Shown: one piece after another, positions 4,901 through 23,602 of the stretch
How positions within the stretch are numbered: position 1 is the stretch's first letter
Layout of the letters: each line of letters opens with the position of its first letter
Sequence record: NC_049850.1
Reading direction: 5' to 3' (one strand)
DNA length: 64,000 bases
Notes under the pieces: model-generated
Told to the model about the DNA's origin: nothing
What the model saw: only the letters and a program-made list of their open reading frames with translations
Database searches by the model: none
Translations under genes and position numbers: made by a program

Positions 4901-5128
4901 TGGAGCCTGAACAACCTGATGGACTCGCTAAAAGCCGCACTCAAGAGTCAGGCTGCGGCTGGTCTCCTGAAAGGAACGGAAAGCGAAGTGTTTGAGCAAA
5001 TCGTCAAACCTTGGCGCTCGAAGAAAATGCGTGGCTGGTTGCAAGAGAACTATCCGATGTTGGACGTTCGTGATCTGGACACGCAGATTCGTGGTGCCCT
5101 GAAACACGCTGACAAGGAGGCTGCATGA
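1958..5128 (+). CDS. polA: DNA polymerase family A with N-terminal UDG-like domain and 3'-5' exonuclease
   Basis: Exo I AFDTET, motif A DYSAHEVR, motif B KAVVFGVLYG, NAPIQG, motif C TVHD; TGRLAS..PNLQQIP. Confidence 0.93.
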   Translation: MLEKEFTFDPAHDLIDKRDPYNLVIHQCNGWAQNKRRIMIVCQFVDSRDLKAGEMLGDRGTRLPFINAMKYGNKIARSYAEDKSIPQASYTVINWAACKHLNLGTAQKREMEVAFGERIKKAIKKFKPTHILFSGDEAIHSVFPQIKHPQYKRGWVHQMQVGEEKIKVVSTLDFFRLLDKQGEHANLLGFWCRHFANLVIGRNPHNIADLTPTPKYIKTLDEFTLLMKKLYKASEVAFDTETRNLSVLFNKILTIQFAMDTNPDRGYVVSVDHPLAHWTKEERLHIKRELKKFFSAKKGPMLLTFNGMFDLRVVRQQLRIPIIWHPVWEITFGEHALDENISSLNKVCSMPDEQLKDSSKFGGLRPILCSYGNDFYFRDDTEFGKGDRGNIANIDPQNPDFLMYAAMDVQSLLRIKQEQLRRADRIMLAGKVWRPHYERHMIHQMGWTAHQLSHLKQDGSKISKSYLRTLLSKEGPLRKELRRAIAEFRVYKEVRQANSELLKESGFKAGFLFGAAKAAGNWMFKLSRTPHKAKLFFDILGLQPLSKTKSGNDAIDKEFVAHYRDKNKIVGLYGEYQALTKLLSTYARGWFKRLTTNVDAAKDNHLRPDYSVWAVVTGRLASMGPNLQQIPSRGKLAKIIKKMFVSTPGYLMIRYDYSAHEVRIWSVAAGDDALAEAFRAGQKLRQAYIAATTDEERAEIKAQLKTKGDIHIQNVFRFFKQWVDKDHPLRHAIKAVVFGVLYGKSAKTLGIDTKQSDLGAIKGQISTLYEESLKPETEKKRVAEINRLIEELDLKLTALIEEDRTPYAQDIIDKMFKAFPQGATWTEGMQRMAEEEYYVYSPSGRRRFLPAAMTQDQQIVAQQVRRGSNAPIQGFASEIGVRAGREILEAYYDALPQFREWLGLEGTDWDWRVLFNRTVHDANYYSVPYAMVIPFLHMMQYQATYGVTAAFKRDFNIKFTIEPEIEAEIMGANDTEGSAWDWSLNNLMDSLKAALKSQAAAGLLKGTESEVFEQIVKPWRSKKMRGWLQENYPMLDVRDLDTQIRGALKHADKEAA

Positions 5129-6265: not shown

Positions 6266-7333
6266 ATGGGCGTATTGTCTCAAGAACGCCTCGAACACAT
6301 CCGGCAGCAACTGGCCATGCTTCCTAACGCAAAGCGTGGTGGCGCAAACCGGATCATGGTCTGCTGCCCATATCATGGGGAGTCAAACCCGAGTGCCGGT
6401 ATCTGGACGGAGGGGCCCTACGCCGGTCTCTTCCGATGCTTCGCGTGTAAGGCACGTGCCAAATGGGACGAGGTGGCTCCGAAGCTGGGGCTGAAGGCGT
6501 TCTATGATGGGCCGCCGCGCGAAGAGAACACGTCGAATCTGTTGATGAGTCGACTGAAGCAAGTCGAGGCCGCAACGAGCGCCGTGGACGCAATGCATGA
6601 GCGGGGTTACCGCGAAGAGAAGCTGAAGTTCTCGCGACTGGCCCCCAACAAGAAGTGGCGCACGATACCGACCAACCTGCTTCTGGAGTTGGGCGGAAAG
6701 ATGTGCGTGAAGTATCTCGACGACTACAACACGTGGTCGACGACGAAGTTCATCTACCTGCCGGTCATGATCCGGGGCGAACAGCGCGGCTATTTCCGGG
6801 CCCGGCTCAAGAAAGACGAGAGCGGCAAGAACCTGCCGTCGTACCTGTTGGCTCCGGGCACACGAGGCTCGAACTGGTCGTCTCAAGACGGCCTGTGGCC
6901 CTACGATCATGCGATAGGCATGATGAAGAAGATGAAATCCAAGACCGTGGTATTGGTCGAAGGGCAGCGCGACGCACTGCGTCTGATCTTGGCTGGAATA
7001 CCAGCCATGTGCATCTTCGGAACTCAGTCGTGGTCAACACAGAAGGCGCGTCACCTCAGCCTCGGAGGCGTGAAGCGCGTTGTACTTTTCATGGACGGTG
7101 ATGCCGCTGGCTTCCACGCAACGGAGCACATCAAGCCGAGCCTGAAGAACGAGGTTGAAGTGCGGGCTCTCTCACTGTGGAAGATGAAGGGCTCCCCGCT
7201 GCTTCCGTATCTCGAAGACCTCGAAATCGACGATGCTACGAAGGCCGCAAAGAAGGACGGCGTGACGCTATGGGACCCGGGTTGCGTCCCGGATCGTATC
7301 ATCAACCGTCTCCGTGAGAAGTATTTCGAGTGA
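6266..7333 (+). CDS. dnaG: DNA primase (Zn-finger plus TOPRIM)
   Basis: CPYHGESNPS...FRCFAC zinc-binding domain; TOPRIM VLVEGQRDAL and FMDGDAAG. Confidence 0.85.
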   Translation: MGVLSQERLEHIRQQLAMLPNAKRGGANRIMVCCPYHGESNPSAGIWTEGPYAGLFRCFACKARAKWDEVAPKLGLKAFYDGPPREENTSNLLMSRLKQVEAATSAVDAMHERGYREEKLKFSRLAPNKKWRTIPTNLLLELGGKMCVKYLDDYNTWSTTKFIYLPVMIRGEQRGYFRARLKKDESGKNLPSYLLAPGTRGSNWSSQDGLWPYDHAIGMMKKMKSKTVVLVEGQRDALRLILAGIPAMCIFGTQSWSTQKARHLSLGGVKRVVLFMDGDAAGFHATEHIKPSLKNEVEVRALSLWKMKGSPLLPYLEDLEIDDATKAAKKDGVTLWDPGCVPDRIINRLREKYFE

Positions 7334-9387: not shown

Positions 9388-9418
9388 TACCCGGGCCTCG
9401 TCCCGGGTATTTTTGTTT
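9388..9418 (+). terminator. intrinsic terminator
   Basis: TACCCGGG-cctcgt-CCCGGGTA followed by TTTTTGTTT. Confidence 0.8.
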
Positions 9419-10370
9419 AAGCCGCGTGCTTGCAGTTGTCGAAGTGGTGGCGCTCCATATTTTTGTTACCCGTGGCCCCACAGTGAGGACACGTCTTCAT
9501 TGGCGCGTCGCGGTGTTGCTGTAGCGACTTCAGGCGAATCTTTTCCTTGCACTCGTCGCTCATGGTTGGGCGCGTTGACGAGGATGCGTCGAAGTCTGGA
9601 TTCTGCTTGCAGTTATCAAAGTGCCACATCTTTGCCACGTTAAGCGCGACTGATTTGTTGCAGTGGGGGCATTCGACCTTTGGTCGACGCAGTGCTGCTG
9701 CTCGGATTTTCTCTGCGTGCTCAGCGCTTTTCGGCCCACGTAGTAGTTCTTTGGTTTCTTCAGAGCGCTTAATGCCAGTCATGCGCTCTCGCCATTCAGT
9801 TGATTTTTTCACACCGCGCCCGGCCGCTGACATCTTCATGCGTGCCTCTTCGGTGTGCTTGTATCCTGACGATCCAGCACCACCGGCACTGGCGTTAGTG
9901 AGTATGCCGCCATCCGCGTATCGACCAATGGATTCGATGATCAGGTCTTCGGCAGCAAAGGCCACGGCCTCGATCAGATCGCTGGACAGGCGCTGCACGA
10001 TCACGTCCAGACCAGCACCTTCTATCTTGCGCACCTTGGTGTGCTTGCGAGTTGGGCGAGTGGCTTTGCGGGATTCGGAGGTGTGCTGCCACATACGAGT
10101 TCCTTTGCCTTTGCCTATGTAAAACGGCTCGAACTCGAATTCGATAGTTTTCCCACGGGCCAGCTTGTAGCTATAGCTGCCCGGCTTACGCGGGTCCAGC
10201 AGTGCGTAGACGTAAAATTCACGCTTCAAGCTGAGTTTTCTGTTGACAGCAGCGTAAAAATCCGTATAGTGCGTGGCTCCCGCTATAAGAGCATCGCGAA
10301 ACGCCTTCGGCTTTACGTGCGCTGTCGTTGCGCTCAGTTCGGTAGCAAATTTCTGCTTGTAGTCTTTCAT
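9417..10370 (-). mobile_element. free-standing GIY-YIG (LEM3-like) homing endonuclease with NUMOD3 repeats and two CPHC zinc knuckles
   Basis: FYVYALLDPR...PFYIGKG motif; KHTEEARMKMS-type repeats; CPHC...HFDNCK twice. GGAG RBS before ATG 10370. It is the only minus-strand gene in this block. Confidence 0.75.
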
Positions 10371-13501: not shown

Positions 13502-14575
13502 ATGAGCTACAAGGGTGACGGTCGCGTAAAGCGCACATACGAGCAAGCAGTACAGGAACTTGCAGCACTTGGGCGCACGCTGATTTCCAGCGAGGCTGAG
13601 TACTATGAGTCACCGCGAACGGTCACGATTGGGTGCCGGTGCGGCGCTGTTCTGAAGCAGAGCGTTTCGGTGGCTGTGCGCGGAAAGGGGTTTTGCGTGG
13701 ATTGCCGCAAAACCTCGGACGCTGCGTCGAAGAGGTCAGTCGTGACCAAGGATGGTGTGTTTGCCACCGTAGCGGAGGCCGCTGCCTTCTACGGAATAGA
13801 CCACAAGACCGTGTATGCTCGTTTGTCAAGCGGATATTCTGACGCAGCGGCCGTGGGCCTTGAACTGCACGCAGCGGCCAACGCAAGTCGCGACCTAGAT
13901 GCTATCGGGTACGTGTACAAAATAACCAACACCGTTAATGGGCTAGTGTACATCGGTCTCACAACGCTGTCTGTAGCCGAACGCTATAAGGGCCACCTTG
14001 CCGCATGCAAAGATGGTATCATGCTGCCTATGTACATTGATATGCGAAAGTATGGGTATGATAAATTCCGTGTGCGTTGCTTGGCTAAGGTTCCTGTACG
14101 GGAACTGCCGGACACGGAACGGCGTCTCATAGAAAAGCACCACGCTACCGATCCGAAGTTTGGATACAACAGCGTGGCTGGCGGTAGTCTCGGTGGGACC
14201 GGGCTCGGCATGGCAGTTGAGTACGAAGGTCGCGTTTTCCACACCCGCAAGGCGTTCGCTAAGCACATAGGGCACGGATACGCAACCGTAACCGAACTCC
14301 TGAAGCTTGGCATGACACCAGTGCAGGTAGCGGAAGAGTGCGAGGCCCGTGCGGCGTCCACAGTGCAGGAAAAGCTGGCCAAGAAGCTGGGCCGAGCCGT
14401 AGTAATCAATGGTGTCGAGTACAACTCAATACGGGCGGCATGCCGCGCGCTCGGGGTAGACAACAACACCGTAACAAGGCGACTTCATCAGGGTTGGTCG
14501 CTTGAGTCCGCGTTTGATACGCGCAAATTCACACGCGGTGATTCACCGCACAACAGGAAAGCAGATGCAAGGTAA
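13502..14575 (+). mobile_element. free-standing GIY-YIG homing endonuclease with Zn ribbon and HTH (NUMOD1/IENR1-like) repeats
   Basis: GYVYKITNTVNGLVYIGLT motif; CRC/CVDC; repeated AEAAAFYGI / RAACRALGV helices. It overlaps the thyX start. Confidence 0.8.
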
Positions 14576-15500
14576 TCCGACGTTCCACGGCGATCAGTGC
14601 GAAGTTCGAGTGATCGAATATTCTAAGTCCAGCAAGACTGGCCACCCGCTCGTGACGTTTCAAACGAAGTATTGGCGCGCGGTTCATGCAGAACTGCTCA
14701 CTCACCGGGCCCTGAGCCGAAACGCGAGCAGCAGCCGCGCTATCCCAACGGCCAAGCTTATCGCCACCATCCGCGACGAGCATCCGTTCCCGGTGCACTG
14801 GGGTGCCAATCAGCCGGGGATGCAGGCTCACGCGGAATGCAGCAATCTGGTTAAGCACCCGCGCACGGGCGAAATGCTGACCCGCGAAGCCGCGTGGTCC
14901 GCAGGTGTGGCTGACGCCTGTGACTGGGCCACGGCGTTTGCGGACGCTGGATACCATAAGCAGATCAGCAATCGATTCGCGGAGAATCTGGGCTGGATCA
15001 ACGTGGTTATCACGACGAGCCAGCTTGACAACTTCTTCGAGTTGCGGGACCACGATGATGCGCAGCCGGACATTCGTGATCTGGCACGCACCATGCGCCG
15101 CGCGATGAACTCTGCCACGCCTCGCATCCTCGATCCGAAGGACCTGACGGACCCGCGTGCATGGCACTTGCCGTACGTGACAATGCAAGAGCGTCAAGCT
15201 CATCCGATCACCGAGTTGCTGGCAATGAGTGCAGCGCGTTGCGCCCGGGTCTCGTACTTGACGCACGACGGCATGAATCCGCTGCTGGCCAAGGACATCG
15301 AGTTGTACCGTCGACTGGTCGAGAGCAAGCCGCTGCACGCGTCACCGCTCGAACATCAGGCGATTGCTACATCCTTTGACTATCCGTCGAAAAACTTGAC
15401 GGGTGGCTGGATGCAGCACCGGACGCTGCTTGAAACTGCTGGCTCCATCGATCAGATGCACGAACGCATGGGCTTTGCCCCGGCACCCGTTACGCAATAA
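14565..15500 (+). CDS. thyX: FAD-dependent thymidylate synthase
   Basis: HAELLTHRALSRNASSSRAIP signature, CARVSY and HASPLEH. Confidence 0.85.
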   Translation: MQGNPTFHGDQCEVRVIEYSKSSKTGHPLVTFQTKYWRAVHAELLTHRALSRNASSSRAIPTAKLIATIRDEHPFPVHWGANQPGMQAHAECSNLVKHPRTGEMLTREAAWSAGVADACDWATAFADAGYHKQISNRFAENLGWINVVITTSQLDNFFELRDHDDAQPDIRDLARTMRRAMNSATPRILDPKDLTDPRAWHLPYVTMQERQAHPITELLAMSAARCARVSYLTHDGMNPLLAKDIELYRRLVESKPLHASPLEHQAIATSFDYPSKNLTGGWMQHRTLLETAGSIDQMHERMGFAPAPVTQ

Positions 15501-15544: not shown

Positions 15545-16216
15545 ATGCTCACACTACCCCAGATTGCGCAGCGCACGAGTGCACGACGTAAAGAGAGCGC
15601 TAAGTACGTGAAGATCACGTACCAGAAGCGTGGGTGGGATAGCCTCGGACGTGGCTATGTCGCCTGCGCCTCTTACTCGACCAAAATCTGGGACCCGTAT
15701 AAGCGGAAGTACGTTCGCAATACGCGGGGCCCCGGTGGTAAGCCGAGACGGTACGTGACTGTTATTGTTTTTCTTGACCCAAGGCTGCATGTTGCTGTAT
15801 CATGTAGCTGCCCAGACTTCCGCTATCGCTGGGAAGTCGCGTTGAACCGGAAACAAGCCGCCGAGATCGAATACTCGAACGGGGAATTGCCGGTAATACG
15901 AAATCCGCGCATGACCACCTCGTCTTGTAAGCATTTGTTCAAGCTTTACGAGACGATCAAACCTCAGCTTCCGGCCCGTCGCGCAGGCGACGATACGCCG
16001 CCGATTGCACCGCCCCAGATCGGGGTCGCACCGTCTCAGCTACGGAAGGTCGAGGAAGCGCGCCGCGCGGCCCTGAAGAACGCGGTTAAACCCGTGGTGA
16101 TCAAGGCTCCGACAAACGTGCAAAGGTCGGTCAAACCGGGCAAGAAGCAATCCACGCTGCCGCGCTCTGCCGTCGCGCCTATTGCGCAACGCATGAAGCA
16201 GAGAAGGAATAAGTGA
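15545..16216 (+). CDS. SWIM-type zinc finger protein with basic Pro-rich tail
   Basis: CSCPDF...CKH motif; AGGAGG RBS. Confidence 0.6.
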   Translation: MLTLPQIAQRTSARRKESAKYVKITYQKRGWDSLGRGYVACASYSTKIWDPYKRKYVRNTRGPGGKPRRYVTVIVFLDPRLHVAVSCSCPDFRYRWEVALNRKQAAEIEYSNGELPVIRNPRMTTSSCKHLFKLYETIKPQLPARRAGDDTPPIAPPQIGVAPSQLRKVEEARRAALKNAVKPVVIKAPTNVQRSVKPGKKQSTLPRSAVAPIAQRMKQRRNK

Positions 16217-17184
16217 TGAAAAGTTATGAACACTCAGCCTCGTTCTCGAAGCTGAAAAACATCACGGAGAGGATTAGCAAGAACCTGACGACGCTGGAAT
16301 ATCTCCACACGCTCGACATGTTCTTGTGGAAGGCGCTCGCGCCGATCCACGCGGAGTGTCCGTCGCTTTTCCAGAACTACGTGGCAAAGATTGTGGCACG
16401 GCAGACCCGCAAGGCGAGCCGACGCTTCACCTCGGACGACCGGACAAAGCTTCCGATTCACCTGTTCAACATGGTGACTACGAAGGACCCGAAGAAGGCG
16501 CACGAGCACGCACGTGCCATGCACCTGAATCGCGGTCTCATGTTCGGTTTCATCGCCCTGTTCTTCAGGCGCGTTGAACAATACGAGCACCTGCACACTG
16601 CGCTCGATCTCGATCCGATTGTTCGGAATTCGAAGATTTACGAGATCGAGCGCAGTATCGGCCTCCGTCCCGGAGCCGCGCTGTTCACGGCGGTGCAGGA
16701 GGCGCGCTTCTGGTACACGAAAGCCCGCAACTTCAAGAACATGATTCTTGAGAAGTACACGCGACTCGCGCTGATGCATGCGAAGACCACGTATAAGGAC
16801 TTCAACCACCACGTACGTCTGGATGACGTTATCCAGATTTACATGATCGTTGTGTCCCGGGCAATCGACCGCTGCGACGCGCGTCAGGGCGTGCTCACCA
16901 CGTTCATCACGAACTGGTTCAAGAGCGCGCGGTCCGAGGTCGCTGAAATGGCCAAGGATCAGGGTGATCAGTCGTACGAAGCACTGGTCGAGGAAATGGG
17001 GGACGCGAGTTCGGAGATTCTGGGCTCGACGGACGGAGGTCTGGGTGACGACATGCACGACCACATCGCGTATGTTGCCAAGCAGATCGACAAGCAAGGC
17101 TATGTCCGGGCCGCACTCCATATCCCCGAGCGGCTATCGAAAAAACAGCTTCAGATTCTTGAGGCATTCGTTCTGGAGGAATGA
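16213..17184 (+). CDS. phage sigma-70-family factor (region 2 present, region 4 apparently absent)
   Basis: ILEKYTRLALMHAK...DDVIQ...RAIDRCDARQGVLTTFITNWFKSA aligns to sigma region 2.1-2.4. Confidence 0.7.
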   Translation: MMKSYEHSASFSKLKNITERISKNLTTLEYLHTLDMFLWKALAPIHAECPSLFQNYVAKIVARQTRKASRRFTSDDRTKLPIHLFNMVTTKDPKKAHEHARAMHLNRGLMFGFIALFFRRVEQYEHLHTALDLDPIVRNSKIYEIERSIGLRPGAALFTAVQEARFWYTKARNFKNMILEKYTRLALMHAKTTYKDFNHHVRLDDVIQIYMIVVSRAIDRCDARQGVLTTFITNWFKSARSEVAEMAKDQGDQSYEALVEEMGDASSEILGSTDGGLGDDMHDHIAYVAKQIDKQGYVRAALHIPERLSKKQLQILEAFVLEE

Positions 17185-17185
17185 T

Positions 17186-17536
17186 TTGAGCAATCCGCTC
17201 GAACTGTCGGTGACGGCAATGAAATCGTTGCTTGCCGACTACGCGCTCCGTGCGAAGCAAGCTGAGGAAACCGCAGGACTGCTAATGGCCAAGACGCTGG
17301 ATGAGGTCGGCCGCCTGCACCTGTTCCAGTTGCTTCAGCAGCACATCGAGGCACGGGCCCACGACAGAGCAGTTCACCAGCAGGCCGTGATTCAAACCAC
17401 GTGCTTAGCACTCGCAACTGCGCTGTCGCAGGACGACGAATCCCTGCGTGACGCAGTGATACGCATCCACAAGAACCTGTCGCTCGCGGCTGATGCTGCG
17501 ATGCAAGTACCCATATCGGCCGACGCTAGTAAATAA
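17186..17536 (+). CDS. hypothetical helical protein
   Basis: TTG start after GGAGGA; this is the 3' part of ORF 16850. Confidence 0.5.
   Translation: MSNPLELSVTAMKSLLADYALRAKQAEETAGLLMAKTLDEVGRLHLFQLLQQHIEARAHDRAVHQQAVIQTTCLALATALSQDDESLRDAVIRIHKNLSLAADAAMQVPISADASK
17526..17535 (+). promoter_or_regulatory. class A motif CTAGTAAATA
   Basis: Upstream of ssb. Confidence 0.5.
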
Positions 17537-17583
17537 GGTCAGCAGTAGCAACAGCAACCAACCAATCGCAAGAAGGAAGAAGT

Positions 17584-19122
17584 ATGGCACGCCAAAAGGG
17601 CACCGATTTCGACAACATCAACACCAACGGCAACAAACGTGACAAAGTGAAGGTCACGGACGTGGTGACCCTGTTCAAGTTCCCGGAAAAGAAGTGGGTG
17701 ACTCTGCGCCTGTACGGTGACATCCACTCGTACGCAACCGCGTGGGTGAAGACGAAGACGAAGGACGGCAAGTCCACGAAGTTCCCGATCGATCTTCCGT
17801 CGTACGACCCGACGACCCAGACGTTCGACAGCACGAAGTACGACCCGTGGTACGAGTTCTCGCAACAAGAGCGCGACAACAACGTCGAGCGTGACGACCA
17901 GATGATTCAGGTCGGCCGCAAGTTCTACATGAACGCGCTGCTGCGTCACCTCCAGAAGCAACAACCGAGCACGAAGATTCGTCCGACGAGCACCGAGAAG
18001 GAAACGGGCTTCAAGGACAAGGACAGCGACACGTGGACGCCGTGGCAAGTTCTGGCGCTGAGCCCGGGCCTGATCGGCAAGATTCGCGAACTGAAGGGTC
18101 TCAACACCGTGACCTCGAAGAAGACGGGTGCCACGAAGACGTACAACGTGTCGGACGAGAAGTTCGGTCGCGACATCCGTATCCTGTACGATTCGACGAA
18201 ATCGCCGGGTGACCAGTACCAAGTGGTGCCGGGTGATTCGCGCACTCCGATGACGGAAGAAGAACTCTCGTTCCTGCGCTGGGACACGTCGGCTCTCGCA
18301 TCGGAACCGCCGAGCGACGAGGAAACGAAGAAGGAATTCGAGTCGTGGGCCAAGCGCAACGGCATCAAGCTGAAGTCGGGCAAGCGCCGTGACGAAGAGG
18401 ACATCGACGAGGACGAAGACGAGTCCCCGAAGAAGGGCAAGTCGAAGAAGACGACGACCTCGAAGAAGAAGCAAGTCGAAGAAGACGACGAGGACGATGA
18501 AGACCTCGACGGTGACGACGATGGCCTCGACGAGGACGAAGACGACGAACCGGCTCCGAAGAAGGGCAAGAAGGCCCCGGCCAAGGGCAAGAAGGTCGTC
18601 GAAGAAGACGACGATGACGACCTCGACGAAGACGAGGACGAAGACGAAGACGAGGATGACGAACCGGCCCCGAAGAAGGGCAAGAAGGCGGCTCCTGCCA
18701 AGGGCAAGAAGAAGCAGGTCGACGAAGACGACGAGGACGAAGACGACGAAGACCTCGATGACGACGAAGACGACGAACCTGCACCCAAGAAAGGCAAGGC
18801 AGTGAAGGGCAAGAAGAAGCCGGTCGAAGAAGACGACGAAGACGAGGACGATGACGACCTCGACGAAGACGAGGACGAAGACGACGAGCCCGCGCCGAAG
18901 AAGAGCAAGAAGGCTGCACCGAAGGGCAAGAAGAAGAAGCCTGTCGAGGACGACGAAGACGAGGATGAAGACGAAGACCTCGACGACGATGAAGACGACG
19001 AGGACGAAGAACCGGCCCCGAAGAAGAGCAAGAAGCCTGCTGCGAAGAAGGTGGCAAAGAAGACCAGCAAGAAGAAGCCGGTCGAAGAAGACGAGGACGA
19101 CGAAGACGACCTCGACGACTAA
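17584..19122 (+). CDS. ssb: single-stranded DNA-binding protein (gp32-like) with long acid/base block tail
   Basis: N-terminal domain with VTLRLYG, RKFYMNAL and DEKFGRDIRI is typical of gp32-like SSBs; acidic C-terminus; adjacent to recA. Confidence 0.6.
   Translation: MARQKGTDFDNINTNGNKRDKVKVTDVVTLFKFPEKKWVTLRLYGDIHSYATAWVKTKTKDGKSTKFPIDLPSYDPTTQTFDSTKYDPWYEFSQQERDNNVERDDQMIQVGRKFYMNALLRHLQKQQPSTKIRPTSTEKETGFKDKDSDTWTPWQVLALSPGLIGKIRELKGLNTVTSKKTGATKTYNVSDEKFGRDIRILYDSTKSPGDQYQVVPGDSRTPMTEEELSFLRWDTSALASEPPSDEETKKEFESWAKRNGIKLKSGKRRDEEDIDEDEDESPKKGKSKKTTTSKKKQVEEDDEDDEDLDGDDDGLDEDEDDEPAPKKGKKAPAKGKKVVEEDDDDDLDEDEDEDEDEDDEPAPKKGKKAAPAKGKKKQVDEDDEDEDDEDLDDDEDDEPAPKKGKAVKGKKKPVEEDDEDEDDDDLDEDEDEDDEPAPKKSKKAAPKGKKKKPVEDDEDEDEDEDLDDDEDDEDEEPAPKKSKKPAAKKVAKKTSKKKPVEEDEDDEDDLDD
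18388..19119 (+). repeat. coding tandem repeat: 7 Asp/Glu blocks alternating with 6 Lys-rich PAPKK..KK blocks
   Basis: Directly visible GACGAA/GAAGAC runs and repeated GAACCGGCCCCGAAGAAG. Confidence 0.95.
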
Positions 19123-19134
19123 GCCAGCGTCGAC

Positions 19135-19144
19135 GTAGTAAATA
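19135..19144 (+). promoter_or_regulatory. class A motif GTAGTAAATA
   Basis: Between ssb and recA, immediately before a terminator hairpin. Confidence 0.4.
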
Positions 19145-19153
19145 AAGTAGGAC

Positions 19154-19189
19154 AGAGCCCGGTAGGCAGAAGTCTATCGGGCTCTTTTT
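19154..19189 (+). terminator. intrinsic terminator
   Basis: AGAGCCCGGTAGGC-agaa-GTCTATCGGGCTCT (with GU pairs) followed by TTTT. Confidence 0.75.
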
Positions 19190-19216
19190 GTTTCCTAATA
19201 ACCGGAACATAGCTAC

Positions 19217-20713
19217 ATGGCAACGAAAAAGGCAGCAGCACCGGCAGCAAAGAAGGCGGCACCCAAGAAGGCACCGGCCGCTAAAAAGACGGCCGTGAAA
19301 GACGAAGTACTCGCGGAAATCGAAGCCGCGACCAAGACACCGAAGTTCGACGTGCGTTCGTTCTATCGTGGAACCATTGACGACGTGAGCCGTCGTCAGG
19401 GCGTTGAGGCCGATCCCATGGAGGACATCAAGCCGCTGAGCACTGGCCTGCTGATGCTGGACCTGCTGTACGGCGGTGGTATCCGACCAGCGATGTACAC
19501 GCACGCTGGCGACGAACAGACGGCAAAGACGACGCTGGCACTGATGGTCATGGTCAACGCAGTCAACAAGAACGTGCCGCTGATCGCGTTCTGGGACTAC
19601 GAGGGCTCGACGAAGAACTCGAAACCGTATCTCGCATCGATCCTGCGTTCGATGGGTGCCAAGGTCGGCATTCGAGACGTGTTCGGCAAGAAAGACAAGG
19701 AAACGGGCCAGTGGCTCGTGCATCCGGTCGTTCAGTACTACCCAGAAACCATTGGCGAGAAGTTCTTCTCGTGGATGGCCGCAATCCAAAAGCAGTACCC
19801 GGACAAGCGTCTGGTGGCCGGTAAGTGGTGGCTGATTTACGACGACAACAAAGCCAACAAGGCCATGATCGGTGACGCACACGATCCGAAGATGGCCAAG
19901 AAATACGGAAAGGGCCTGTGGGTCGAAGCCCCGGACGGCAACCTTCAGGGTGTGGTCATCGTCGACTCGTACCCGGCAATGAACCCGGAGTCGAACGACG
20001 ACGAGGACGCAGACAACTCGTTGGGCGTCCACGCGCGATTCTTCGCCAAGCACCTTCCGCGCGTGAAGGGCCGCATGGGCAAGAAGATGATTGCACTGCT
20101 CGGCATGAACCAGCTTTCGGATATTCCGATGGCCATGTACGGGCCGAAGCAACAAGAGTCGTGCGGCAAGAAGCTGCGCTACTACTCGGATGTCCGAATC
20201 TGGAACACGAAGCGTGGCTCCGGCATGCCGTTCAACGCAGTCTTCGACAAGGAAGAAGGCACCGAACTCGAAAAGAGCGTGACGGGCAAGGGCAACGACT
20301 CGTATCGGTATATCCAGACGAAGACGGTCAAGAACAAGCTGTGGACGCCGGGCCGGAAAGCGTGGTTCCGCATCTGGGTTGCAGACGCCGAAGGCAACGG
20401 CTGCGGTCTCGACCCGTTCTTCGACACGATCATGTATCTGAAGGAGACGGGACAGCTTGTCGGTAACGACCGCAAGCGCCTGACCCTGAAGCTTGACGGC
20501 CTCGATCCGATCCACAAGCCCACGTGGATGGAACTCAAGACGTGGGTGCTCGGGACCAAGGAACAGAAGGTCGAAATCTGCAAGAAGTTCAAGATCGCGA
20601 AGCCGTTCTGTCTGCGTGCATGGTGCTTCAAGCAGAGCGAATCGGGTAAGGGCGAAACGCTCTACGTCGAGCAGAAGGGTGAGAAGAAGGTCAGCGAGGA
20701 ATCGGAGGACTAA
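19217..20713 (+). CDS. recA: RecA/UvsX-like recombinase
   Basis: LSTGLLMLDLLYGGG, Walker A variant GDEQTAKTT, Walker B VIVDS, LLGMNQL, CGKKLRYYSDVRI and KTVKNK. Confidence 0.8.
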   Translation: MATKKAAAPAAKKAAPKKAPAAKKTAVKDEVLAEIEAATKTPKFDVRSFYRGTIDDVSRRQGVEADPMEDIKPLSTGLLMLDLLYGGGIRPAMYTHAGDEQTAKTTLALMVMVNAVNKNVPLIAFWDYEGSTKNSKPYLASILRSMGAKVGIRDVFGKKDKETGQWLVHPVVQYYPETIGEKFFSWMAAIQKQYPDKRLVAGKWWLIYDDNKANKAMIGDAHDPKMAKKYGKGLWVEAPDGNLQGVVIVDSYPAMNPESNDDEDADNSLGVHARFFAKHLPRVKGRMGKKMIALLGMNQLSDIPMAMYGPKQQESCGKKLRYYSDVRIWNTKRGSGMPFNAVFDKEEGTELEKSVTGKGNDSYRYIQTKTVKNKLWTPGRKAWFRIWVADAEGNGCGLDPFFDTIMYLKETGQLVGNDRKRLTLKLDGLDPIHKPTWMELKTWVLGTKEQKVEICKKFKIAKPFCLRAWCFKQSESGKGETLYVEQKGEKKVSEESED

Positions 20714-21411
20714 TGGGATACAATCCGCTCGTGCTCTCCACACGTGAAGAGCAAGAACAGGCGGATGACTTCCTGATGTCCCTGACGCAATTGGCACGGA
20801 CTACTACCAATCCGCAAGGTAGTTCTCCTATGCAAGAGATTGAGCGGAGACTAGCCGAGGCGCAGGCCCCGGAACAAAACGCGAGCGCTCCGGCCCCCCA
20901 GCGGGTACGACGTTCGCGTTTTTTCTATTCTCCGACCAAGAGCTTCAAGGAGGCCGTAGACGATGCTAAGGGGATTTCTGAACCGAAGTCATTGCCTGTT
21001 GAAAATGGTGAGATAAACGACCGGGCCGAGGCGTACGCGCGTGAACTCCCTGTCGCGCTCTCGGACAAGATCGCGGTTATACGCGAGTACCTGTTGAACG
21101 AGTGGGCACCGTCTGCGTTTGCGACGAGCGCGGCCACCGCACAGTTCATGGATGTTGCGCAACGTACACTTGGGACTGCCATCGACACGCAGCCCATGAT
21201 GAAGCTGCAACTCATGGTCGACAAGGCACTCACCGTCAAGATGGCTGAGTTCGTAGCCAAGTTCATGAATCTGGACCCTTCTCAGGCACCGGCACTAGCA
21301 GATCACGTGGCCCCCAAGAAGGAGGCCATCATCATCCATCCACATGACGACGAGCGCCGTCAGCGGCAGCGTCCAGCACCACGCAGAGAACGAGAAGATG
21401 AAGAAGATTGA
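20713..21411 (+). CDS. hypothetical protein
   Basis: 232-aa ORF between recA and terL, overlapping both. Confidence 0.6.
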   Translation: MGYNPLVLSTREEQEQADDFLMSLTQLARTTTNPQGSSPMQEIERRLAEAQAPEQNASAPAPQRVRRSRFFYSPTKSFKEAVDDAKGISEPKSLPVENGEINDRAEAYARELPVALSDKIAVIREYLLNEWAPSAFATSAATAQFMDVAQRTLGTAIDTQPMMKLQLMVDKALTVKMAEFVAKFMNLDPSQAPALADHVAPKKEAIIIHPHDDERRQRQRPAPRREREDEED

Positions 21412-23602
21412 CTATTCGAGGGTGACCGGCGTAGCTGATCATCTTGCGGAACTTGCCGAGTCGGGTGATTACAATCTGTTTCCCGGCCTCCTTTCGGACT
21501 CCGAAATGGAAGAGATTCAGCGTCGACGCGTGAAGGCAAAGCCGAAGGGCAAAGTCGCCACCGTGCGCGAAGACGAGTACATCATCAAGGGTGGCGGTGT
21601 CAGCGACGATGGTGAGGTCGTCGACGACTTTGACATCGCACGCTACATGGCAGAGGCCGAGGACAAGGAAACGGGCGTCCTGCACGATCTGAAGATCGAT
21701 ACGCGCGACATGCGCGCTGCCAAGAACTTCTACGACTACGCATTCAACATGCAGTCGGCAAAGGCAAACCCTCCGTGGTCGCGCCAGATGTGGGTTGGCC
21801 TGATGCTATTCGGTGAGGTGTGTCCACGCTGTTCGGATCACGACTGGCTAGACATTCACAACGTTCCGGTCGACTTCAAGGCCAAGGACATGCCGGATCG
21901 CCTACAGTTGCTGGAGTTCGGAAAGTGCCCGCGTTGCGGCTCCGACAAGTGGGACCTGATTCAAAACCACGGACTCCGAAACTACATGCAGTACGTGGGC
22001 GTGATCGGGCAGCGGGGCTCGAAGTCGTCGCTCACCGCACTCCTGTCCTCGTACTCGCTGCATCGGTTTGTCAAGTTCCCGAACTACGCATCGCTGTCGA
22101 AGTCGATGCAGGCGTCGACCGAGTTGACCGGCACGTTCGTATCGCTGACGTTTGCCAAGGCCGTTGGTGTTCTGTGGACTCCGTTCAAGAAGATCATCGA
22201 AGAGAGCGACTGGTGGAAGGGATTGTTCGATATCCTGAAGCATCACGGTAACCAGATGGGCACCGAGTTGTACACGATGTCGAGCCTGTACCTGACGCTA
22301 GGCTACAAGAACATACGATTCTACCCAAGCGGCCCGAAGTCGAGCACGCTGCGGGGGGACACGCGGATTCTTGCGGCACTGGACGAATTGGGTCTGTTCC
22401 CGCTTCCGACAGGAGATAGTGAGGAAGACGAAACAAGTGAACGTGCAAACTCGGACGAGGCGCACAAGTCGCTGTACAACAGTCTCGGTACTGTTTCGGT
22501 CACCTACGAAAACCTGCTGAAGGAAGGCGTATCCAGCGCACCGCCACCTCTGCTCTTCAACGTGTCGTCGCCGTACTCGCAGCGCGACAAGATGATGCGG
22601 CTGCTTCGGGAGGCGCGGACGCCGGACGGTGAGAAGGTGATGCTTGGCGTCAACCTCGCGACGTGGGAAATGAACCCGTTCTACACGCGAAACTCCCAGA
22701 TCATCGCACAGGCGTACGCAGCCAACCCCGAAAAGGCGGCTCGTGACTGGGGTGCAAGTCCTCCGGCCGTACACTCGCGATTCATCCATCCGGATACTGT
22801 GGGCGAAGGTGTGTTTGTTGGCGGTCCTAACGCTCACAACTTCATCTACCAATTCGACAAGCCGGGTGAGGTGTATGGGCGCATCGAGCGGGTACGCGGT
22901 AACCAGTGGCCGAGCATCATCGCTATCGACGCAGGTTCCTCGAACAACTCGTTCTGTATCGCGGCCGTGCACTACAACTTCGAGACCGGGAAGACGGTGG
23001 TCGGAACCGCACTCGAATGTATTCCGATGAACGGGAAGAAGGTAAACTTCAACCTGCTGTACCTGAACGTGATCCTGAAACTGGCGCGCGAAACGAATGC
23101 GGTTGGCATGGTGGCCGACCAATGGCAGTCGATTGATCTGTTGCAGCGTATCCGCGAGGACATGGGCCTGAATCCGCTCGGGAAACCCCGGTGCTTGCCT
23201 CGTCAGTACTCGCCACGTCGTAAGGACTTCGATGCATGTCGCGCGATGCTCACGTCGAAGAACCTGATTCTTCCGACAATCACCGAGTCTGATCGGGATC
23301 GGATTGTGGCGGGCGGTATCGACGATTACCGCTCTGAATTCATGAACCGTCCGGTTCCCCACATTCTGCACCAGATGATCACGGTGCGCGATGTGGGCCC
23401 CGAAAAGTGCCCGGAAAAGGGCGAAGGCTACACCGACGACATGTTCCGGGCCATCGTTTTGGGCTCTACCATCGTCCACCATCCGAGAGTGATGGAGCGT
23501 CTGGCAGAAGCGCGGAACTTCAACTACGGCGGCGACAACGGAAACCGTATGCCGGAACCCGGATTTGCTGGTCGCTCGGGTGGCTTCGGGGCACGTCGAT
23601 AA
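21398..23602 (+). CDS. terL: terminase large subunit
   Basis: Walker A GQRGSKS, Walker B AALDE, coupling motif VSSP, nuclease IAIDAG and TDDM. Confidence 0.8.
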   Translation: MKKIDYSRVTGVADHLAELAESGDYNLFPGLLSDSEMEEIQRRRVKAKPKGKVATVREDEYIIKGGGVSDDGEVVDDFDIARYMAEAEDKETGVLHDLKIDTRDMRAAKNFYDYAFNMQSAKANPPWSRQMWVGLMLFGEVCPRCSDHDWLDIHNVPVDFKAKDMPDRLQLLEFGKCPRCGSDKWDLIQNHGLRNYMQYVGVIGQRGSKSSLTALLSSYSLHRFVKFPNYASLSKSMQASTELTGTFVSLTFAKAVGVLWTPFKKIIEESDWWKGLFDILKHHGNQMGTELYTMSSLYLTLGYKNIRFYPSGPKSSTLRGDTRILAALDELGLFPLPTGDSEEDETSERANSDEAHKSLYNSLGTVSVTYENLLKEGVSSAPPPLLFNVSSPYSQRDKMMRLLREARTPDGEKVMLGVNLATWEMNPFYTRNSQIIAQAYAANPEKAARDWGASPPAVHSRFIHPDTVGEGVFVGGPNAHNFIYQFDKPGEVYGRIERVRGNQWPSIIAIDAGSSNNSFCIAAVHYNFETGKTVVGTALECIPMNGKKVNFNLLYLNVILKLARETNAVGMVADQWQSIDLLQRIREDMGLNPLGKPRCLPRQYSPRRKDFDACRAMLTSKNLILPTITESDRDRIVAGGIDDYRSEFMNRPVPHILHQMITVRDVGPEKCPEKGEGYTDDMFRAIVLGSTIVHHPRVMERLAEARNFNYGGDNGNRMPEPGFAGRSGGFGARR

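What the first reader, a model, noticed from the sequence alone, without database searches (positions are those of the whole stretch)
18388..19122. SSB with a ~245-aa nucleolin-like block polyampholyte tail
Seen: seven Asp/Glu blocks, most with a central D-L-D, alternate with six PAPKK(G/S)KK...KKK.V blocks, making up about half the protein. Known: SSB tails are usually short acidic peptides, while alternating charge blocks drive phase separation in nucleolin and Nopp140-type proteins. Inference: this could be a condensate scaffold for a membraneless phage replication compartment, or a multivalent hub or histone-chaperone-like DNA mimic.
Basis: partly seen in the sequence, partly recalled or inferred. 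Interest (0 to 1): 0.72.

Follow-up and report, generated by a model that had tools for sequence, protein, structure and literature searches.

The report
Phage SSB with striped charged tail
A jumbo phage's T4-gp32-type single-stranded-DNA-binding protein carries a 244-residue disordered tail of alternating acidic and lysine-rich blocks; this tail is a conserved, apparently undescribed hallmark of a whole phage SSB family and probably acts as a multivalent docking and self-association arm.

Summary
Window 17584-19122 (+) is gp241 of Burkholderia phage BcepSaruman, 512 aa. Residues 269-512 hold seven acidic and six Lys-rich blocks. Charge segregation is far beyond chance: kappa 0.66 against 0.17±0.03 in shuffles.

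The SSB label holds. The N-domain model (pLDDT 93.5) matches only RB69 and T4 gp32 cores in the PDB at Foldseek probability 1.0. Synteny of sigma factor, SSB and RecA-like recombinase is conserved.

The tail is predicted disordered. It is a family trait, not a one-off:
- 432 clusters (50% identity) share the N domain.
- Of 140 representatives, 98 have tails of at least 100 aa and 100 have at least 5 alternating blocks.
- In the close clade, tail length (228±23 aa) and net charge (−59±10) are held while block number ranges 4-13.

Acid blocks carry a D-flanked Leu or Phe twice as often as chance. Fifteen relatives end in the bacterial SSB tip motif. The adjacent recombinase always has a Lys-rich N-terminal arm.

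Best reading: an expanded, modular version of the gp32 acidic C-terminus that works as an electrostatic hub. Condensate formation is plausible but untested. I rate it a new variant of a known kind, with moderately high interest.

The parts
17584..19122 (+). Complete SSB gene (BcepSaruman gp241, 512 aa plus stop)
   Evidence: ORF list. 100% identical to NC_049850.1 141584-143122, annotated 'single strand DNA binding protein'. PHROG 15004 at E=1e-82.
17584..17649 (+). N-terminal disordered arm (residues ~1-22). Its start is conserved in the clade: M-A-[KR]-x-K-G-x-D-[FL]-D.
   Evidence: pLDDT 64-65 in the N-domain model and 30-44 in the full-length model. Alignment A2. The analogy to the gp32 N-terminal cooperativity arm is inferred.
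17650..18360 (+). gp32-type ssDNA-binding core (residues ~23-259): OB-fold-containing domain ending in helix 245-258
   Evidence: AlphaFold2 model with pLDDT 93.5 and pTM 0.86. Foldseek PDB top 5 are RB69 gp32 core 2a1k, T4 gp32 core 1gpc and gp32-Dda-dT17 8gme, probability 1.00, E 2e-5 to 2e-3, TM 0.44-0.61. 64 viral models match at E<=1e-3, many named SSB. hhalign to a gp32 profile gives E=0.002 over 168 colinear columns.
18388..19122 (+). Disordered block-polyampholyte tail (residues 269-512): 7 acidic and 6 Lys-rich blocks, net charge about -67
   Evidence: Block parse. Kappa 0.66 against 0.17 in shuffles. No secondary structure and pLDDT 43-54 in the full-length model.
18427..19119 (+). 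Six tandem modules of 36-41 codons, each a Lys-rich block followed by an acidic block with a central D-L-D. Unit starts at 18427, 18550, 18664, 18778, 18889 and 19012.
   Evidence: TRF periods 105-123 and 225. Unit alignment and 69-82% pairwise DNA identity.
19154..19185 (+). Intrinsic-terminator-like hairpin (14-bp stem, 8 G-C pairs, T-run) just after the SSB stop codon
   Evidence: Consensus scan. It is the longest stem of the six found. Function not tested.
19217..20713 (+). RecA/UvsX-like recombinase with a Lys/Ala/Pro-rich N-terminal arm (9 Lys in the first 28 residues) and an acidic C-terminal tip. Proposed client of the SSB tail.
   Evidence: Pfam RecA at 4e-13 and PHROG 97 UvsX-like at 1.5e-47. 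The Lys-rich arm is present in all 7 relatives examined. It is the only replication or recombination protein in the window with such an end. The interaction is inferred.
16216..17184 (+). Phage sigma factor, conserved upstream neighbour (synteny marker of the module)
   Evidence: PHROG 17569 at 2.9e-74. The order sigma factor, SSB, RecA is conserved in RSL1, Motura, Vibrio GR7B, Xanthomonas PhiXhv-12, Dickeya AD1 and NCTB.

Best explanation
This is the phage's gp32-type ssDNA-binding protein. The short acidic C-terminal domain of classical gp32 has been replaced by a ~245-residue disordered arm built from 6-7 repeated modules. Each module is a Lys-rich block followed by an Asp/Glu block that carries one Leu (Phe in relatives) flanked by Asp.

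Shown: the gp32-like fold of the core; the predicted disorder and extreme charge segregation of the tail; and family-wide conservation of tail architecture, length and net charge together with the D-[L/F]-D motif.

Inferred mechanism: each acidic module behaves like one copy of an SSB acidic tip. It can sit on the basic ssDNA-binding surface of its own or a neighbouring core when no DNA is bound. That would give auto-inhibition and protein-protein cross-links. Once ssDNA occupies the core, the modules are freed to dock onto basic surfaces of partners. The first candidate partner is the Lys-rich N-terminal arm of the adjacent RecA-like recombinase. In relatives that end in the DDDIPF-type tip, host SSB-binding proteins are candidates too.

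The interleaved Lys blocks partly neutralise the arm. They also give it attractive contacts with acidic blocks of other molecules or with DNA. The protein would then be multivalent and self-associating, and would concentrate replication and recombination factors on ssDNA, possibly as a condensate.
For: Identity as an SSB:
- Foldseek matches only gp32 cores at probability 1.0, using a pLDDT 93.5 model.
- Many phage SSBs match in BFVD.
- hhalign to gp32 is colinear over the core, with the Cys columns of the family aligned to gp32 C77/C87/C90.
- PHROG 15004 matches.
- Synteny with the RecA-like recombinase is conserved in 7 distant phages.
- PMC7824862 places phiRSL1, Motura and NCTB in jumbo-phage subgroup 2.2, and describes group 2 as having gp32-orthologous SSBs.

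The tail is functional rather than junk:
- Of 98 family tails of at least 100 aa, 96 have kappa above every shuffle. The median is 0.58 against 0.16.
- In 50 close relatives, tail length is 228±23 aa and net charge is -59±10, while block number ranges 4-13.
- Repeat units are only 69-82% identical at the DNA level.

The modules look like docking motifs:
- 147 of 286 acid blocks hold a hydrophobic residue, against 70±5 by permutation.
- Those residues are mostly Phe or Leu, with Asp at -1 (86%) and +1 (79%).
- 15 of 140 representatives end in D[IVLM]P[FYW], the bacterial SSB-Ct motif DDDIPF (PMC5872125). Motura is one of them.
- Classical gp32 tails end in Asp/Leu-rich tips.

Partner: the recombinase has a Lys-rich arm in every relative examined.

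Precedent:
- The gp32 acidic end is proposed to occupy its own DNA site, and its C-terminal region recruits partners (PMC11551737).
- E. coli SSB and gp32 phase-separate in vitro (PMC7584906, PMC11951158).
Against: No binding, localisation or phase behaviour has been measured for any family member.

17 of 50 close relatives end in a basic block, not an acidic one. A terminal acidic tip is therefore not required.

About half of the acid blocks family-wide have no hydrophobic residue.

The tail is strongly net negative (-67). That charge could keep it expanded and self-repelling rather than self-associating.

The central placement of Leu/Phe is partly forced by how I defined the blocks.

Part of the sequence-level support for gp32 homology is weak: hhalign probability is 14%, and only 1 of 105 members hits Pfam gp32. 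The structural match carries that claim.

I did not check whether the phage encodes a second SSB outside the window.
Confidence: 0.55

Rival explanations
1. Condensate scaffold. The tail's primary role is to drive phase separation, so that the SSB forms a membraneless replication and recombination factory in a jumbo phage that lacks a protein-shelled nucleus. Partners are sorted in by complementary charged arms.
For: Kappa is 0.66 and the fraction of charged residues is 0.70, the regime in which block polyampholytes attract each other. The pattern is conserved in 96 of 98 long tails. E. coli SSB and T4 gp32 form droplets in vitro. The recombinase carries a Lys-rich arm. The phage encodes a sigma factor and belongs to a group described as lacking its own RNA polymerase. 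Its DNA is therefore presumably transcribed in the open cytoplasm.
Against: The large net negative charge (-53 to -77) opposes homotypic coacervation unless polycations or basic partners are present. There are no data on localisation or material state. Multivalent recruitment without a separate phase explains the same sequence features.
Confidence: 0.25
2. Pure electrostatic regulator or entropic bristle. The tail only tunes ssDNA affinity, cooperativity and solubility of the core, like the gp32 C-terminal flap but larger. It has no specific partners. The Leu/Phe residues are relics of the ancestral repeat unit.
For: The gp32 acidic end is proposed to occupy its own DNA-binding site (PMC11551737). 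The core is basic (pI 9.15, net +6) and the tail acidic. Net charge and length are the most tightly conserved tail properties.
Against: A regulator would not need alternating Lys blocks or a Leu/Phe twofold enriched and flanked by Asp. It also does not explain the recurrent SSB-Ct-type ends in relatives or the co-conserved recombinase arm. Leu/Phe interchange between lineages argues for selection rather than inheritance.
Confidence: 0.15
3. DNA or polyanion mimic aimed at the host. The acidic blocks sequester host DNA-binding proteins such as nucleoid proteins, nucleases or defence sensors, with the SSB core serving as a carrier.
For: There are 120 acidic residues in 244, in runs of 12-27. Relatives carry poly-Asp runs of about 70 residues.
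Against: Known DNA mimics are rigid folded proteins, whereas this tail is predicted disordered and half-neutralised by Lys blocks. The gene sits in the replication and recombination module with strictly conserved synteny, not among early anti-host genes. No PADLOC or anti-defence evidence was sought or found.
Confidence: 0.05

Closest known systems
Bacteriophage T4/RB69 gp32 (PDB 1gpc, 2a1k, 8gme; Pfam PF08804)
   Same: The core fold is the best and only confident structural match. Both share the three-part plan: a flexible N-terminal arm, an ssDNA-binding core and a disordered acidic C-terminus. Half of the family keeps His/Cys columns aligned with the gp32 Cys77/Cys87/Cys90 positions. The gene neighbours a UvsX/RecA-type recombinase in a replication module. 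gp32 tails also end in Asp/Leu-rich tips.
   Different: Sequence identity is 10-13%. Pfam and PDB sequence searches miss it. In BcepSaruman the four His/Cys columns are Ala/Leu/Asp/Tyr, so it is probably zinc-free. An extra conserved ~13-residue insert (G-F-K-D-K-D-S-D-T-W-T-P) is present. The tail is 244 aa with a charged fraction of 0.70 and kappa of 0.66. Nine gp32 family members have tails of 56-109 aa, charged fraction 0.14-0.39, almost no basic residues and kappa 0.17-0.31.
Bacterial SSB (E. coli type): OB-fold core, intrinsically disordered linker and DDDIPF tip
   Same: The functional logic matches: a DNA-binding core, a disordered linker and acidic/hydrophobic docking motifs. 15 of 140 family representatives, including Achromobacter phage Motura, end in the same D-[IVLM]-P-[FYW] tip (motif as printed in PMC5872125). 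E. coli SSB phase-separates through its linker and tip (PMC7584906).
   Different: The core fold class differs: a gp32-type monomeric core, not the homotetrameric bacterial OB domain. The linker here is highly charged and blocky rather than Gly/Gln/Pro-rich. BcepSaruman itself ends in D-D-L-D-D, not the IPF tip. There are many internal tip-like modules instead of one.
Eukaryotic charge-block proteins (nucleolin N-terminal region, Nopp140, nucleophosmin)
   Same: Alternating long acidic tracts and Lys/Ala/Pro-rich basic tracts in a disordered region attached to a nucleic-acid-binding domain.
   Different: There is no homology: profile hits to eukaryotic acidic proteins are low-complexity matches only. 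There are no Ser clusters or phosphorylation logic. The protein is from a bacteriophage, and the acid blocks carry a single Leu/Phe.
Bacillus RNA polymerase delta subunit (acidic disordered C-terminus with a Lys tract; PDB 6zfb chain D appeared as a weak hit)
   Same: A prokaryotic nucleic-acid-machinery protein with a long acidic disordered tail interrupted by a Lys tract (weak hit; the description is from my own knowledge).
   Different: It has a single Lys tract rather than a periodic array. The folded domain and function are unrelated, and the hit is compositional (E=0.48).

Membership tests
gp32-type phage SSB (T4 gene 32 family) | Core fold superposable on the gp32 ssDNA-binding core | tested here: met
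   The AF2 model has pLDDT 93.5. The Foldseek PDB top five are all gp32 cores, at probability 1.00, E 2e-5 to 2e-3 and TM 0.44-0.61. The next hits have probability of 0.2 or less.
gp32-type phage SSB (T4 gene 32 family) | Detectable sequence homology to gp32 (Pfam PF08804) | tested here: inconclusive
   The window protein has no Pfam hit. One of 105 relatives hits PF08804 at E=0.0023. hhalign of the family profile against a 9-sequence gp32 profile gives E=0.002, probability 14%, and 168 colinear columns.
gp32-type phage SSB (T4 gene 32 family) | Zinc site (His plus three Cys) in the core | tested here: not met
   Columns 53/71/87/90 are H/C/C/C in 54, 67, 55 and 46 of 105 relatives. In BcepSaruman they are A/L/D/Y. 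The site exists in the family but not in this protein. That these columns bind zinc is inferred from their alignment with gp32 C77/C87/C90.
gp32-type phage SSB (T4 gene 32 family) | Cooperative ssDNA binding | not testable with these tools
   This needs biochemistry. Only indirect support is available: a basic core (pI 9.15), conserved Trp/Tyr/Arg columns, and synteny with the recombinase.
gp32-type phage SSB (T4 gene 32 family) | Disordered acidic C-terminal domain | tested here: met
   Residues 261-512 have no secondary structure and pLDDT 43-54. Net charge is -67. It is four times longer than classical gp32 tails and interleaved with Lys blocks.
Bacterial SSB (OB-fold tetramer with SSB-Ct) | Bacterial SSB OB domain (Pfam SSB) | tested here: not met
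   No Pfam or NCBIfam SSB hit. No bacterial SSB appears among the confident structural matches.
Bacterial SSB (OB-fold tetramer with SSB-Ct) | C-terminal DDDIPF-type tip | tested here: not met
   BcepSaruman ends in D-D-L-D-D. The tip is present in 15 of 140 family representatives and in Motura.
PHROG 15004 (jumbo-phage 'single strand DNA binding protein') | Full-length profile match | tested here: met
   E=1.2e-82 with residues 3-390 on profile positions 2-385 of 421. The profile itself includes part of the tail.
Block polyampholyte / charge-block IDR (physical class, not a homology family) | High fraction of charged residues, with opposite charges segregated into blocks well beyond random | tested here: met
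   The charged fraction is 0.70. Kappa is 0.66, against 0.174±0.026 with a maximum of 0.27 in 1000 shuffles.
Block polyampholyte / charge-block IDR (physical class, not a homology family) | Phase separation or compaction driven by the blocks | not testable with these tools
   This requires biophysical measurement or imaging.

The most novel reading that the evidence does not exclude
The striped tail is the scaffold of a membraneless replication and recombination factory in jumbo phages that do not build a protein nucleus. Short charged arms on client proteins, such as the Lys-rich N-terminus of the RecA-like recombinase, act as partition signals. This would be a bacteriophage counterpart of nucleolar charge-block organisation, evolved on a gp32 chassis and conserved across hundreds of phage lineages.
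Probability: 0.2. Interest if true: 0.85.

Novelty: new variant of a known kind. Interest (0 to 1): 0.6.

Why it matters
SSBs are the organising hubs of replication, recombination and repair. Their disordered tails are now known to control partner recruitment and phase separation in E. coli and T4.

This family offers a natural, extreme and evolutionarily tuned version. Its tail has near-constant length and charge, variable block number and a recurring D-[L/F]-D motif, and it is spread over at least 432 sequence clusters of large phages infecting Burkholderia, Ralstonia, Erwinia, Dickeya, Pseudomonas, Xanthomonas, Vibrio and others.

The family gives a ready comparative data set for asking how charge patterning encodes function in a prokaryotic system. 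It also bears on how non-nucleus-forming jumbo phages organise DNA metabolism.

On the practical side, it firms up the annotation of a Pfam-invisible gp32 homologue. It also shows that a zinc-free branch of the family exists.

Tried and rejected
Searches that found nothing:
- Pfam and NCBIfam on the protein gave nothing meaningful; the only hit was a compositional PBP1_TM match.
- phmmer of the N domain against PDB sequences found nothing.
- A profile of full-length relatives against the PDB found only low-complexity hits such as glycinin, sigma-factor linkers and RPA43. I reject these as homology.
- An N-domain-only profile against the PDB found nothing.
- hhalign against single T4 gp32 was not significant: probability 0.3-1.4%.
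- Rfam on 17000-19400 found nothing near threshold, so there is no known gene-32-type leader element.
- No sigma-70-like promoter was found in 16000-21000.

Measures and features set aside:
- Sequence charge decoration (SCD) did not discriminate, because the net charge dominates it.
- The long antisense ORFs (17946-19070, 374 aa poly-Ser; 18365-20797, 810 aa) and the +1/+2-frame Arg/Thr-rich ORFs are by-products of the GA-rich repeat, not genes.
- A scan of all window ORFs found no other protein with comparable charge blocks.

Literature and tool failures:
- Searches for a description of this tail (polyampholyte + phage + ssDNA; jumbo phage + SSB + disordered; ORF222 + RSL1) found none.
- My first kappa script timed out, and one script failed on a naming error. 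Both were rerun.

Rejected idea: recent replication-slippage junk. The units are only 69-82% identical, and the architecture is conserved down to 30% core identity.
Full report
**What the window is.** The flagged stretch lies in an ORF at 17584..19122 (+) encoding 512 aa. The DNA is 100% identical to Burkholderia phage BcepSaruman NC_049850.1 141584-143122. This is gene gp241, labelled 'hypothetical protein' in GenBank and 'single strand DNA binding protein' in RefSeq. The window therefore corresponds to about 124001-188000 of a 263.7-kb jumbo phage. The gene sits in a replication and recombination module:
- DNA polymerase at 1958-5128
- primase at 6266-7333
- thymidylate synthase at 14565-15500
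- sigma factor at 16216-17184
- a small ORF at 17186-17536
- the SSB
- a RecA/UvsX-like recombinase at 19217-20713
- large terminase
- a RuvC-like resolvase

**Checking the observation.** Coordinate 18388 starts codon 269, so the flagged region is residues 269-512, or 244 aa and 48% of the protein.
- Seven acidic blocks (12-27 aa, net -10 to -21) alternate with six Lys-rich blocks (13-21 aa, net +7 to +11).
- Six acidic blocks contain D-L-D and the first has D-I-D.
- Five basic blocks begin PAPKK[G/S]K.
- The tail has 73 Asp, 47 Glu and 50 Lys. Its charged fraction is 0.70 and its net charge is about -67. The first 265 residues have pI 9.15 and net +6.
- Kappa is 0.66 against 0.174±0.026 (maximum 0.27) in 1000 shuffles.
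- The DNA shows six tandem units of 36-41 codons (18427-19119) that are 69-82% identical.
- BcepSauron differs by one in-frame Lys codon.

The long ORFs on the opposite strand and in other frames are by-products of the GA-rich repeat.

**Is it an SSB?** Sequence methods alone are nearly blind here:
- Pfam, NCBIfam and PDB sequence searches find nothing real.
- Only PHROG 15004, labelled SSB, matches, at E=1e-82.

An AlphaFold2 model of residues 1-268, built on 105 relatives, is confident, with pLDDT 93.5 and pTM 0.86.
- Foldseek against the PDB returns RB69 gp32 core (2a1k), T4 gp32 core (1gpc) and the gp32-Dda-dT17 complex (8gme) as the top five. These have probability 1.00, E 2e-5 to 2e-3 and TM 0.44-0.61. 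Everything below has probability of 0.2 or less, apart from one further RB69 gp32 chain (2atq_B, probability 0.63, rank 13).
- Against predicted viral structures, 64 matches have E<=1e-3, and many are named SSB.

I fetched T4 gp32 (NC_000866, an accession seen in papers; locus L010) and eight diverse gp32 relatives.
- A local profile-profile alignment gives E=0.002 over 168 colinear columns: residues 37-240 against gp32 41-221.
- About half of the family carries His/Cys/Cys/Cys at columns 53/71/87/90. The Cys columns align with gp32 C77/C87/C90.
- BcepSaruman and its clade have Ala/Leu/Asp/Tyr at those columns, so this branch has probably lost the zinc site.
- A comparative study places phiRSL1, Motura and NCTB in jumbo-phage subgroup 2.2. 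It describes group 2 as using gp32-orthologous SSBs and phage sigma factors rather than a phage RNA polymerase (PMC7824862).

I conclude with high confidence that the N-terminal half is a divergent gp32-type ssDNA-binding core.

**The tail is disordered.** In the full-length model, residues 261-512 have no secondary structure and pLDDT 43-54. Residues 1-18 are also of low confidence.

**The tail is a family hallmark.**
- A full scan of 1.84 billion representatives with the N domain finds 432 clusters at E<=1e-3.
- Of the 140 top representatives that cover the core, the median tail is 156 aa. 98 have tails of at least 100 aa, and 100 have at least five alternating blocks, with up to 26.
- Of the 98 long tails, 96 have kappa above all 100 of their shuffles. 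The median is 0.58 against 0.16.
- All eight named relatives examined show the same stripes: RSL1, Motura, BCSR5, Sauron, Vibrio GR7B, Xanthomonas PhiXhv-12 (with a poly-Asp run of about 70), Dickeya AD1 and NCTB.
- The phage database lists 95 records with this core, mostly jumbo phages of Erwinia, Pseudomonas, Dickeya, Burkholderia, Rhizobium and Xanthomonas.
- Nine classical gp32 proteins have tails of 56-109 aa, charged fraction 0.14-0.39, almost no basic residues and kappa 0.17-0.31.

**What is conserved in the tail.** In 50 close relatives (at least 43% core identity), tail length is 228±23 aa and net charge is -59±10. The number of acidic blocks ranges from 4 to 13 and barely correlates with length, r=0.21. 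One relative with 83% core identity has one module more than BcepSaruman. A module grammar recurs family-wide:
- Pro follows 44% of acid blocks.
- Val precedes 34% of acid blocks.
- The non-acidic residues inside acid blocks are mainly Phe (145) and Leu (84), although these two make up only 3.4% of tail residues.
- 147 of 286 large acid blocks hold a hydrophobic residue, against 70±5.4 when the uncharged residues are permuted.
- That residue is flanked by Asp at -1 (86%) and +1 (79%), against a 66% Asp background.

Its central position is partly forced by my block definition.

At the C-terminus of the 140 representatives:
- 15 end in D-[IVLM]-P-[FYW], the bacterial SSB-Ct motif printed as DDDIPF in PMC5872125. 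Motura is one of them.
- 54 end acidic with a hydrophobic residue.
- 35 end basic.

Classical gp32 tails also end in Asp/Leu-rich tips.

**The neighbour.** The order sigma factor, SSB, RecA-like recombinase is conserved in all the distant relatives examined. In every one, the recombinase begins with a Lys-rich (often Lys/Ala/Pro) arm of 20-50 residues, and several end with a short acidic tip. In the window it is the only replication or recombination protein with such an arm. A strong terminator-like hairpin (19154-19185) follows the SSB stop.

**Mechanism.** Shown: a gp32-like basic core, a long disordered arm with extreme and conserved charge striping, a conserved D-[L/F]-D motif, and a co-conserved basic arm on the neighbouring recombinase.

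Inferred, by analogy with gp32 and E. coli SSB:
- The gp32 acidic end is proposed to occupy its own DNA site, and its C-terminal region recruits partners (PMC11551737).
- The E. coli SSB tip and linker mediate partner binding and phase separation (PMC7584906).
- T4 gp32 and UvsX form condensates in vitro (PMC11951158).
- By analogy, each acidic module is one copy of an SSB tip. Without ssDNA, the modules bind basic core surfaces in cis or trans. With ssDNA they are released and recruit basic partners.
- The Lys blocks temper the charge and supply attractive contacts between molecules or with DNA. Together this makes the protein multivalent.

Whether this goes as far as a separate liquid phase is open. 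The net charge of -67 argues that polycationic partners would be needed.

**Rivals** are a dedicated condensate scaffold, a passive electrostatic regulator, and a host-directed polyanion mimic. They are weighed in the rival section.

**Novelty.** The gene and its SSB label are already in public databases. The fold assignment, the zinc-free branch and the family-wide striped tail with its motif grammar were not found in any paper I could search. I rate it a new variant of a known kind: a gp32-type SSB with an expanded modular polyampholyte C-terminus.

**Limits.**
- No experiment exists for any member of the family.
- I did not inspect the rest of the phage genome for a second SSB or for compartment proteins.
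- Some metagenomic representatives may be truncated, which affects the counts of tail ends.

Noticed in passing
window 19217-20713 (+); L002 4558-6003; L003 4597-6198; L006 4530-; L007 4168-5637; L008 3833-; L009 3796-5307: The RecA/UvsX-like recombinase next to the SSB begins with a Lys-rich (Lys/Ala/Pro) disordered-looking arm in BcepSaruman and in all six other relatives examined. It often ends in a short acidic tip. No other replication or recombination protein in the window has such an arm.
   Followed up: partly
window 17740-17853 (SSB residues 53-90): About half of the SSB family has His/Cys/Cys/Cys at four columns that align with the Cys positions of T4 gp32. BcepSaruman, RSL1, Motura and BCSR5 have other residues there. 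A zinc-free branch of a gp32-like family is implied.
   Followed up: partly
window 19154-19185 (+): A 14-bp-stem, GC-rich hairpin followed by a T-run lies 32 nt after the SSB stop codon. It is the strongest terminator-like site in 16000-21000. This suggests the SSB ends a transcription unit separate from the recombinase.
   Followed up: no
window 17186-17536 (+): A small, helix-rich ORF (gp240, 116 aa) lies between the sigma factor and the SSB. It has recognisable counterparts at the same position in RSL1 and Motura. Its function is unknown.
   Followed up: no
window 17946-19070 (-) and 18365-20797 (-): Very long open frames lie antisense to the SSB (374 aa of poly-Ser; 810 aa rich in Arg and Leu). 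They are artefacts of the GAC/GAA/AAG-rich repeat, which lacks stop codons in several frames.
   Followed up: yes
window 17584-17620 (SSB residues 1-12): The disordered N-terminal arm of the SSB carries a conserved M-A-[KR]-x-K-G-x-D-[FL]-D start. This is a further D-[F/L]-D element next to basic residues, at the opposite end of the protein from the tail modules.
   Followed up: no
window 9417-10370 (-) and 13502-14575 (+): Two annotated homing endonuclease genes are embedded in the replication and nucleotide-metabolism module. One abuts thymidylate synthase, with the two ORFs overlapping by 11 nt.
   Followed up: no
window 20713-21411 and 21344-23602 (+): The annotated large terminase ORF overlaps the preceding hypothetical gene by 68 nt. 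That gene ends in a mixed Arg/Glu/Asp-rich tip.
   Followed up: no
L007 2387-3814 (Xanthomonas phage PhiXhv-12): The homologous SSB carries an uninterrupted run of roughly 70 Asp residues within its tail. This is an extreme homopolymer for a bacterial-virus protein.
   Followed up: no
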